Source: Anolis carolinensis (taxonomy: Eukaryota). Taken from it: a stretch of DNA of 64,000 nucleotides. The stretch covers positions 26,647,190 through 26,711,189 of the forward strand of contig NC_085846.1 of the NCBI RefSeq assembly GCF_035594765.1, given 5' to 3'. Made by a program: the position numbers and the translations under genes. The notes under the pieces were generated by a model, which did no database searches, had not been told where the DNA came from, and saw only the letters and a program-made list of their open reading frames with translations. This document shows positions 38,640 to 38,998 of the stretch, piece by piece. How positions within the stretch are numbered: position 1 is the stretch's first letter; each line of letters starts with the position of its first letter.

Positions 38640-38998
38640 GGGTTGATGTGAGTTTTCCGGGCTGTATGGCCATTTTCCAGAAACATTCTCTCCTGACGTT
38701 TCACTGCATCTATGGCAGGCATCTTCAGAGGTTGTGAGGTCTGTTGGAAACTAGGCAAATGGGGTTTATATATCTGTGGAAAGTCCTCAAACAGACAAGA
38801 GTTCTTTCTCGCACTCTGGACTTTCCACAGATATATAAACCCCTCTCACCTAGTTTCCAACACACCTCACAATCTCTGATGATGCCTGCCATAGATGCAG
38901 GCGAAACGTCAGGAGAGAATGCTTCTGGATCATAGCCATACAGCCCGGGAAAACTCACAGCAACCCAGTGATTCCTGCCATGAAAGCCTTCGACAACA
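38640..38998. mobile_element. Penelope-like fold-back element in HOXB8 intron
   Basis: Minus copy 38640-38785 and plus copy 38786-38998 with tail, inserted into the intronic minisatellite. Confidence 0.8.
38873..38913 (+). ncRNA. Minimal type I hammerhead ribozyme motif (Penelope-derived), intact core, in HOXB8 intron
   Basis: TCT-CTGATGA-T-GCCTGC-catagat-GCAGGC-GAAA-C-GTC|AGG. Confidence 0.75.

What the first reader, a model, noticed from the sequence alone, without database searches (positions are those of the whole stretch)
38873..38913. Intact sense-strand hammerhead ribozyme motif inside the HOXB8 intron
Seen: CUGAUGA core (38876-82), perfect 6-bp stem II (GCCTGC/GCAGGC), GAAA (38903-06), GUC cleavage triplet (cut after 38910), 3-bp stem I and a palindromic ACGU mini stem III, all on the HOXB8 pre-mRNA strand. 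Established: Penelope-like elements carry minimal type I hammerheads that cleave poorly as monomers and better as dimers. Inference: HOXB8 pre-mRNA could be cut co-transcriptionally, tuning splicing or output. The inverted copy ~200 nt upstream (38640-38785) would pair with and mask the motif, which could act as a folding switch.
Basis: partly seen in the sequence, partly recalled or inferred. Interest (0 to 1): 0.8.

Follow-up and report, generated by a model that had tools for sequence, protein, structure and literature searches.

The report
Dead Penelope-element hammerhead in HOXB8 intron
The hammerhead ribozyme motif is really there, but it is the standard ribozyme motif of a truncated, inverted-duplicated Penelope-like retrotransposon (Poseidon family) that landed in the HOXB8 intron. 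Nothing suggests it controls HOXB8.

Summary
Window 38873-38913 (+) carries a full hammerhead core: CUGAUGA, one unpaired U, a 6-bp stem II, GAAA, an ACGU palindrome and a GUC cleavage site. It lies on the sense strand of the HOXB8 intron (36826-39427).

It is not a locus-specific device. It is the known minimal hammerhead at the pLTR/ORF junction of the Anolis Penelope-like element Poseidon_Ac. The cut site lies 26 nt after the element's ATG, as published. The 361-bp insertion (38640-39000) has the typical PLE structure:
- two 5'-truncated copies joined head to head;
- each outer end at a published reverse-transcription start site;
- the 30-40 nt "tail" on one side only;
- an AT-rich target with a likely 12-bp duplication.

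Sixteen fragments of this repeat lie in the 64-kb window. Core positions decay about as fast as flanks. Three copies keep the whole motif, one of them in the HOXB6 intron, also sense.

In the pre-mRNA the motif is predicted to be buried in a roughly 150-bp hairpin (about -250 kcal/mol). Published single motifs of this class do not self-cleave. The insertion sits in a lineage-specific part of the intron that is absent from lacertid and snake HOXB8. The proposed regulatory role is not supported.

The parts
36826..39427 (+). HOXB8 intron. Exon 1 is 36399-36825 and exon 2 is 39428-39735, stop codon included.
   Evidence: Exon 1 ORF runs [10 protein letters not shown]...FPWMRPQ with donor G|GTGAGC. 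The acceptor is ...CCCCAG|CAGCCGCC, reading [10 protein letters not shown] and then the homeodomain. Exon 1 is 92% identical to Sceloporus undulatus Hox-B8.
38640..39000 (.). Whole Penelope-like element (Poseidon family) insertion: two 5'-truncated copies joined head to head.
   Evidence: Inverted repeat found. Matches the published Poseidon_Ac consensus (short-pattern checks). Boundaries come from aligning the flanks to neighbouring intron repeat units.
38639..38786 (-). Left arm: inverted 5'-truncated copy without the tail. Its outer end corresponds to about ORF position +86 (...CAACCC).
   Evidence: 90% identical to the right arm over 150 nt. It ends at the same point as 9 other copies in the window.
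38695..38728 (-). Second hammerhead motif, on the antisense strand: CUGAAGA core, GAAACGUC, and a stem II weakened by a 1-nt deletion and a substitution.
38790..39001 (+). Right arm: about 90 nt of pLTR 3' end, the hammerhead, and the first 119-120 nt of the PLE ORF including the optional tail. It ends in the AC-rich ...CGACAACACAT.
   Evidence: Compared with Poseidon_Ac positions about 2585-2667 and 1-119. The 3' end falls at the published RT start region, 111-118 nt into the ORF. Searches also apply.
38873..38913 (+). The reported minimal hammerhead: stem I 38873-75/38911-13, core 38876-82, bulged U 38883, stem II 38884-89/38897-902, GAAA 38903-06, ACGU 38906-09, and predicted cut after C38910.
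   Evidence: The architecture matches the min-HHR description in PMC4209133 and the PAc HHR in PMC11167929.
38882..38935 (+). Remnant of the PLE ORF start: ATG at 38882-84, 17 codons (MPAIDAGETSGENASGS), then TAG at 38933-35.
   Evidence: The Poseidon_Ac ORF begins MPAIDVGETSGENASGT. The cut site lies 26 nt after the ATG, as published.
38628..38639 (.). Putative target-site duplication, left copy (TTTTTTGTGTGT).
   Evidence: Both flanks align to the same 12 nt (39160-39171) of an uninterrupted neighbouring repeat unit. The two copies have diverged (7 of 12 identical), so this is inferred.
39001..39012 (.). Putative target-site duplication, right copy (TGATTTATGAAT).
63177..63211 (+). Another fully intact copy of the same hammerhead, on the sense strand of the HOXB6 intron. 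It belongs to repeat copy 63095-63247.
   Evidence: HOXB6 exon 1 is 62211 to about 62647, with donor GTAAGT.

Best explanation
The motif is the ordinary minimal hammerhead at the pLTR/ORF junction of a Penelope-like retrotransposon of the Poseidon family, here in an old, dead, 5'-truncated insertion in the HOXB8 intron. The insertion most likely arose by target-primed reverse transcription from both cleaved DNA ends. Each cDNA started at one of the element's two internal RT start sites, which explains why the outer ends are fixed. Both cDNAs were 5'-truncated and were joined head to head, which explains the inverted repeat with a pivot at 38787-38817. In the element's own life cycle the hammerhead is thought to process multimeric PLE transcripts, as a dimer and/or with the element's protein. 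In this intron copy it is a passenger. In HOXB8 pre-mRNA it is expected to be locked in a long hairpin with the left arm and removed with the intron. Shown here: the motif, its homology to Poseidon_Ac, the insertion anatomy, the multiple decaying copies, the predicted hairpin, and the absence from lacertid and snake introns. Inferred: the two-ended TPRT origin, the lack of cleavage in vivo, and neutrality.
For: (1) Homology. The published Poseidon_Ac consensus ends ...cctcacaacctctgagg and begins atgcctgccatagatgtgggcgaaacgtcagg.... The window reads the same way across 38818-39001. Consensus-derived 19- and 24-mers match at 38819-37 and 38978-39001 with 0 mismatches. The cut site is 26 nt after the ATG, as published.
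(2) PLE insertion hallmarks described in PMC8557442 and PMC11167929 are all present: 5' truncation, an adjacent inverted 5'-truncated copy, a 30-40 nt tail at one end only, 3' ends at two fixed sites (+86 and +118/119), and an AT-rich, microsatellite-like target with a putative 12-bp TSD.
(3) There are 16 fragments in 64 kb on both strands, and four inverted pairs with different pivots.
(4) Core positions differ from the modal base in 10.1% of cells against 13.5-17% in the flanks. Five of 12 copies keep all 12 core nucleotides and 3 keep the whole motif.
(5) Folding. As a monomer the hammerhead shape scores -8.8 kcal/mol against an MFE of -20.7 that pairs CUGAUG with CGUCAG. In 38600-39040 the MFE is -260 kcal/mol, all but one of the 15 core positions checked (the variable N7, U38880, is the exception) pair with the left arm at P>=0.95, and stem II has P=0. 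The same holds for every nascent-transcript length tested.
(6) Literature. Single min-HHRs show no detectable cleavage and dimers cleave weakly. The PAc HHR cleaves only with PAc protein, and no RNA-seq ends map to its cut site.
(7) The intron stretch 37360-39320 that holds the insertion has no counterpart in five lacertid and snake HOXB8 loci, whose introns are about 840-930 nt and carry no such motif.
Against: The core of this copy is fully intact, and its stem II is a perfect Watson-Crick helix. The published consensus has two G.U pairs there. The core decay rate is nominally a little lower than in the flanks (10% against 14-17%, small sample). Thermodynamic models ignore tertiary contacts, proteins and helicases. 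Orthologous introns of other anoles could not be examined, so conservation within Anolis is untested. No RNA-end data were available.
Confidence: 0.9

Rival explanations
1. One reading: the sense-strand hammerhead cleaves HOXB8 pre-mRNA co-transcriptionally, possibly as a dimer in trans with other PLE transcripts or helped by PLE protein. The inverted arm acts as a switch and tunes HOXB8 output.
For: The core, stem II and ACGU palindrome are intact on the sense strand. The same ribozyme family cleaves in vitro with PAc protein. A preprint reports that tandem hammerhead retrozymes are depleted from introns, which suggests such motifs can matter in genes.
Against: Single motifs of this class do not cleave, and there is only one sense copy in the intron. 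The complement is transcribed first, and the hairpin is predicted to dominate at all transcript lengths. The fragment carries only 120 nt of the ORF, whereas the published minimal RNA for PAc-mediated insertion needs the first 172 nt and the protein-binding motif is hypothesised to lie there. No RNA-seq ends were seen at the cut site even for active PAc. The decay pattern across copies looks neutral, and an equally intact copy sits in the HOXB6 intron. The insertion lies in a lineage-specific, non-conserved part of the intron.
Confidence: 0.03
2. The relevant feature is not the ribozyme but the roughly 150-bp intronic double-stranded hairpin. It could be a substrate for A-to-I editing or for Dicer/Drosha, giving small RNAs or affecting HOXB8 splicing.
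For: The predicted hairpin is about -250 kcal/mol. Weak sub-threshold resemblance to miRNA precursor models appears at the hairpin tip: mir-3492 scores 26.3 bits against a gathering score of 44.
Against: The miRNA-model hits are below threshold and are expected for any hairpin. Similar inverted PLE pairs occur at least three more times in the window, so the structure is a by-product of insertion. There is no conservation outside this lineage and no expression data.
Confidence: 0.05
3. The hammerhead-like motif is a chance match of short consensus boxes.
For: No Rfam hammerhead model scores it.
Against: There are 3 descriptor matches against 0 in 100 shuffles. The motif is homologous to an experimentally tested PLE hammerhead. 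The Rfam models expect a closed helix III and no bulged nucleotide, so this class is missed by design.
Confidence: 0.01

Closest known systems
Hammerhead of Poseidon_Ac (PAc), the Penelope-like element of Anolis carolinensis (Mob DNA 2024, PMC11167929)
   Same: Same position at the pLTR/ORF junction. The ATG overlaps A9, the bulged U and G10.1. The cut is 26 nt after the ATG. Loop II (CAUAGAU), the GAAACGUC box and the downstream ORF/tail sequence up to the AC-rich RT start site are the same.
   Different: This copy is roughly 80-90% identical by eye, so it is an older or different subfamily. N7 is U instead of G. Stem II is GCAGGC (all Watson-Crick) instead of GUGGGC (two G.U pairs). Stem I has a G.U in place of a G-C. 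The copy has no RT/EN ORF (stop after 17 codons) and is fused to an inverted partner.
Minimal hammerheads (min-HHRs) of metazoan PLEs (Cervera and de la Pena 2014, PMC4209133)
   Same: Long helix II, short helix I, an unpaired nucleotide 5' of stem II, no real helix III but a palindrome that allows dimers, location in pLTRs, mostly dispersed single motifs from truncated PLEs, and pairs on opposite strands 100-700 bp apart.
   Different: Nothing substantive. That paper lists turtles and snakes among reptiles, not lizards.
Conserved intronic hammerheads of amniotes (Rfam Hammerhead_HH9 and HH10)
   Same: A hammerhead on the sense strand of an intron of a protein-coding gene.
   Different: As far as I recall, those are stable ribozymes that act on their own and are conserved at orthologous positions across amniotes. 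This motif has no helix III, no Rfam match, is a recent transposon fragment, and is absent from the orthologous lacertid and snake introns.
Non-LTR retrozymes (tandem type I hammerhead repeats giving circRNAs; PMC7229834, and a 2026 bioRxiv preprint)
   Same: Type I hammerheads with an unstable, palindromic helix III, related to PLE pLTRs.
   Different: Retrozymes are direct tandem repeats that allow dimeric cleavage and circularisation. This locus is a single inverted pair, so no two sense copies are adjacent.

Membership tests
PLE minimal hammerhead (min-HHR / Poseidon_Ac HHR) | Conserved catalytic core: C3 U4 G5 A6 N7 G8 A9, G12 A13 A14, A15.1, U16.1, and H17 not G | tested here: met
   CUGAUGA 38876-82, GAAA 38903-06, U38909, C38910.
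PLE minimal hammerhead (min-HHR / Poseidon_Ac HHR) | Long helix II (6-8 bp) with an unpaired nucleotide at its 5' end | tested here: met
   Six Watson-Crick pairs, 38884-89/38897-902, with pair probability >=0.95 in the isolated 71-nt RNA. U38883 is unpaired between A9 and G10.1. The feature is described.
PLE minimal hammerhead (min-HHR / Poseidon_Ac HHR) | Short helix I (2-5 bp) | tested here: met
   UCU 38873-75 pairs with AGG 38911-13: 3 bp, one of them G.U. Most other copies have CCU/AGG.
PLE minimal hammerhead (min-HHR / Poseidon_Ac HHR) | No stable helix III; a small palindrome that allows a dimeric helix III | tested here: met
   ACGU at 38906-09. A trans ACGU/ACGU helix plus both stems II evaluates to -24.3 kcal/mol, but this is not the predicted dimer MFE of -44.8.
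PLE minimal hammerhead (min-HHR / Poseidon_Ac HHR) | Located in the pLTR or at the pLTR-ORF junction of a Penelope-like element | tested here: met
   Flanking sequence matches the end and the start of the Poseidon_Ac consensus.
PLE minimal hammerhead (min-HHR / Poseidon_Ac HHR) | Self-cleavage at H17 (as a dimer or protein-assisted) | not testable with these tools
   This needs in vitro transcription and cleavage assays.
Penelope-like element insertion (Poseidon clade) | 5' truncation with a fixed 3' end at the internal RT start sites, and an optional 30-40 nt tail | tested here: met
   Copies end either at ...CAACCCA(G) (about +86) or at ...GACAACACA(T) (+118/119). This locus has the tail on the right arm only.
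Penelope-like element insertion (Poseidon clade) | An adjacent inverted 5'-truncated copy forming inverted repeats | tested here: met
   Arms 38639-38786 and 38818-38967. Three more inverted pairs lie in the window. The feature is described.
Penelope-like element insertion (Poseidon clade) | ORF encoding reverse transcriptase and GIY-YIG endonuclease | tested here: not met
   Only the first 17 codons remain, followed by a stop (38882-38935). This is a fragment, not an autonomous copy.
Canonical type I hammerhead (Rfam Hammerhead_1 and the other Rfam hammerhead families) | Covariance-model score at or above the gathering threshold | tested here: not met
   No hammerhead hit at gathering score or at E<=10 on 801 nt or 91 nt.
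Conserved functional intronic hammerheads (HH9/HH10 type) | Conservation at the orthologous intron position across species | tested here: not met
   Absent from HOXB8 introns of two lacertid and three snake assemblies. The surrounding 2 kb has no counterpart there. Other anoles were not tested.

The most novel reading that the evidence does not exclude
The PLE fragment has been co-opted. Under particular conditions, such as expression of Poseidon protein, trans-dimerisation with abundant PLE transcripts, or helicase opening of the hairpin, the sense hammerhead cuts HOXB8 (and HOXB6) pre-mRNA. Alternatively the 150-bp intronic hairpin yields small RNAs or editing that modulate the cluster. Either would link transposon activity to Hox output in anoles.
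Probability: 0.03. Interest if true: 0.75.

Novelty: already known. Interest (0 to 1): 0.1.

Why it matters
The evidence shows an ordinary case instead: one of many decaying Poseidon/Penelope fragments that have accumulated in this lizard's HoxB cluster. The locus is still a useful textbook example of PLE insertion anatomy, with its inverted 5'-truncated pair, one-sided tail and fixed RT start sites. It also shows that Rfam hammerhead models do not detect this abundant class, so negative Infernal results should not be read as absence of a hammerhead.

Tried and rejected
- Rfam/Infernal with all families was run three times: the whole window at gathering score, 801 nt at E<=10, and 91 nt at E<=10. 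No hammerhead model matched. The only hits were sub-threshold hairpin and miRNA noise. I take this as a limit of the models, not evidence against the motif.
- TRF did not report the roughly 155-nt intron repeat because it is too diverged. Blastn did find it.
- Cross-species test in anoles. The word search with HOXB8 exon 1 gave Sceloporus as the closest named hit, and no anole was listed among the 15 cluster members shown. The Sceloporus isoform X2 is not on record in the contig index.
I did not type it into an aligner. I compared it by eye and with two short patterns, so the percentage identity to the consensus is only approximate.
- No consensus of the copies was built or printed; only per-column counts were computed.
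- The dimer evaluation with both cis stems I and a trans helix III is not a nested structure and could not be scored by ViennaRNA.
- No contig taken for human was fetched. The window contains no N.

Full report
**1. What is in the sequence**

Window 38873-38913 on the + strand reads UCU-CUGAUGA-U-GCCUGC-CAUAGAU-GCAGGC-GAAA-CGUC-AGG. All invariant hammerhead positions are present: C3 U4 G5 A6 (N7 = U) G8 A9, G12 A13 A14, A15.1, U16.1 and C17.
- Stem II is six Watson-Crick pairs.
- Stem I is three pairs, one of them G.U.
- One extra U (38883) sits between A9 and stem II.
- There is no helix III. A15.1 and U16.1 enclose only CG, giving the palindrome ACGU.

A descriptor of the core plus GAAACGTC finds three sites in the window and none in 100 dinucleotide-preserving shuffles.

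- HOXB9, HOXB8 and HOXB7 homeobox exons and HOXB8, HOXB7 and HOXB6 first exons all lie on the + strand.
- HOXB8 exon 1 ends at 36825 (donor GTGAGC) and exon 2 starts at 39428 after a CAG acceptor.
- The motif therefore lies in the 2,602-nt intron on the sense strand.
- The window has no N.

**2. What it is**

The motif sits in a 361-bp inverted repeat. The arms are 38639-38786 and 38818-38967, about 90% complementary. Blastn with the right arm finds 16 fragments of the same repeat in the 64-kb window, on both strands.

A literature search led to the in vitro study of PAc, the Poseidon Penelope-like element of Anolis carolinensis (PMC11167929). Its supplement gives the Poseidon_Ac consensus.
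- In a tandem arrangement the consensus end (...cctcacaacctctgagg) joined to its start (atgcctgccatagatgtgggcgaaacgtcagg...) forms the same hammerhead.
[quoted passage not shown] Here the ATG is at 38882-84 and the cut would follow 38910, which is 26 nt.
- Sequence upstream (the gactttccacagatatata... block) and downstream, up to ...ccatgaaagccttcgacaacacat ending at 39001, follows the consensus.
- Two consensus-derived short patterns match at 38819-37 and 38978-39001 without mismatch, and also match in other copies.
- The remnant ORF reads MPAIDAGETSGENASGS and then stops. The consensus reads MPAIDVGETSGENASGT.

**3. Insertion anatomy**

The multiple alignment of the 16 fragments shows variable 5' ends and only two kinds of 3' end. 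One is at ...CAACCCA(G), about ORF +86. The other is at ...GACAACACA(T), ORF +118/119.

This matches published descriptions.
- The PAc paper reports RT initiation in an AC-rich stem-loop 111-118 nt into the ORF. It reports a second nearby start site, and identifies the sequence between the two with the optional 30-40 nt "tail".
- Craig et al. 2021 describe PLE insertions as highly 5'-truncated. They often have an adjacent inverted 5'-truncated copy, a tail at only one end, and a bias toward microsatellite targets.

The HOXB8 insertion shows each of these features. The right arm has the tail and the left arm does not. The left flank is T-rich and GT-rich.

Aligning both flanks to uninterrupted neighbouring intron repeat units shows that they overlap on the same 12 nt. 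This implies a diverged 12-bp target-site duplication at 38628-39 and 39001-12.

Three other inverted pairs in the window (near 19210, 31145 and 45712) have different pivots but the same outer ends. PAc cleaves and extends both DNA strands in vitro. I therefore infer that the inverted pairs arise from reverse transcription primed at both ends of the break. This last step is inference.

**4. Is the motif under constraint?**

Across the copies, the 12 invariant core positions differ from the modal base in 10.1% of cells. The flanks differ in 13.5-17%. The CpG of ACGU differs in 25%.
- Five of the 12 copies that span the motif keep all 12 core nucleotides.
- Three keep the whole motif: the reported one, its antisense partner at 38695-38728 (with a weakened stem II), and 63177-63211.
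- The last lies in the HOXB6 intron, also on the sense strand.

An intact core in one copy is what neutral decay at about 10% divergence would leave in a fair fraction of copies.

**5. Would it act in HOXB8 pre-mRNA?**

Folding predictions:
- As an isolated 71-nt RNA, the predicted MFE (-20.7 kcal/mol) pairs CUGAUG with CGUCAG. The hammerhead shape scores -8.8, and stem I has zero pair probability.
- In context (38600-39040) the MFE is -260 kcal/mol. Of the 15 core positions checked, all but the variable N7 (U38880) pair with the left arm at P>=0.95, and stem II has probability 0.
- The complement is transcribed first. Folding nascent transcripts ending at 38860, 38890, 38902, 38913, 38930 and 38967 shows the hairpin already dominant at each length.
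- These are thermodynamic predictions. They ignore tertiary contacts and proteins.

Published experiments point the same way:
- Single min-HHRs show no detectable cleavage, and dimers and trimers cleave weakly.
- The PAc hammerhead cleaves only in the presence of PAc protein.
- No RNA-seq reads begin or end at its cut site.

The intron has no second sense copy that could form a cis dimer.

**6. Comparison with other squamates**

HOXB8 exon 1 was searched on its own. The joined two-exon protein was not built or searched. The closest named relative is Sceloporus undulatus at 92%.

Loci for lacertid and snake HOXB8 proteins were fetched as L001-L005.
- Their CDS spans are 1,571-1,666 nt, so their introns are about 840-930 nt.
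- Window 36922-37356 at the 5' end of the intron aligns to them at 78-93%, and the exons at 83-91%.
- Window 37360-39320 has no counterpart there, and no hammerhead-like motif occurs in those loci.
- The extra 1.7 kb in the window consists of a diverged array of roughly 155-nt units (37745-39349) plus the PLE insertion.

The motif therefore lies in lineage-specific sequence. Other anoles could not be examined with the tools available.

**7. Comparison with known families**

All sequence and structure features of PLE min-HHRs, and the hallmarks of PLE insertion, are met. Cleavage could not be tested. Rfam hammerhead models do not match. This is expected, because this class lacks helix III and has a bulged nucleotide, and Cervera and de la Pena needed a special descriptor to find it. 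The motif is not comparable to the conserved intronic HH9/HH10 ribozymes.

**8. Verdict**

The Penelope-like attribution and the masking by the inverted arm are right. The regulatory inference is not supported. This is a known kind of element in an unremarkable state, and interest is low.

Noticed in passing
window 63095-63247 (motif 63177-63211, + strand): A second fully intact copy of the same PLE hammerhead (CUGAGGA core, perfect stem II, GAAACGUC). It lies about 530 nt into the HOXB6 intron, also on the sense strand.
   Followed up: partly
window 36922-37356: The 5' part of the HOXB8 intron is conserved at 78-93% identity with lacertid and snake HOXB8 introns, about as well as the coding exons. 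It is a candidate conserved non-coding element.
   Followed up: partly
window 37745-39349: A diverged array of roughly 155-160-nt units (70-88% identity, some inverted at 38013-38177) fills most of the HOXB8 intron and is found nowhere else in the window. It accounts for the intron being about 2.6 kb against about 0.9 kb in lacertids and snakes. TRF missed it.
   Followed up: partly
window 19085-19307, 31058-31237, 45632-45823: Three more head-to-head inverted pairs of the same PLE fragment, with different pivot points but the same outer ends. The one at 45632-45823 lies in the HOXB7 intron and has lost the CUGANGA half of the motif.
   Followed up: partly
window 40200-42525: A cluster of four PLE fragments (40200-40376, 40519-40663, 41041-41214, 42350-42525) lies between HOXB8 and HOXB7. 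It shows heavy PLE accumulation inside this Hox cluster.
   Followed up: no
window 38762-38842: The tip of the PLE hairpin gives a sub-threshold match to the miRNA precursor model mir-3492 (26.3 bits, gathering score 44, E=0.005). It most likely just reflects the hairpin shape.
   Followed up: no
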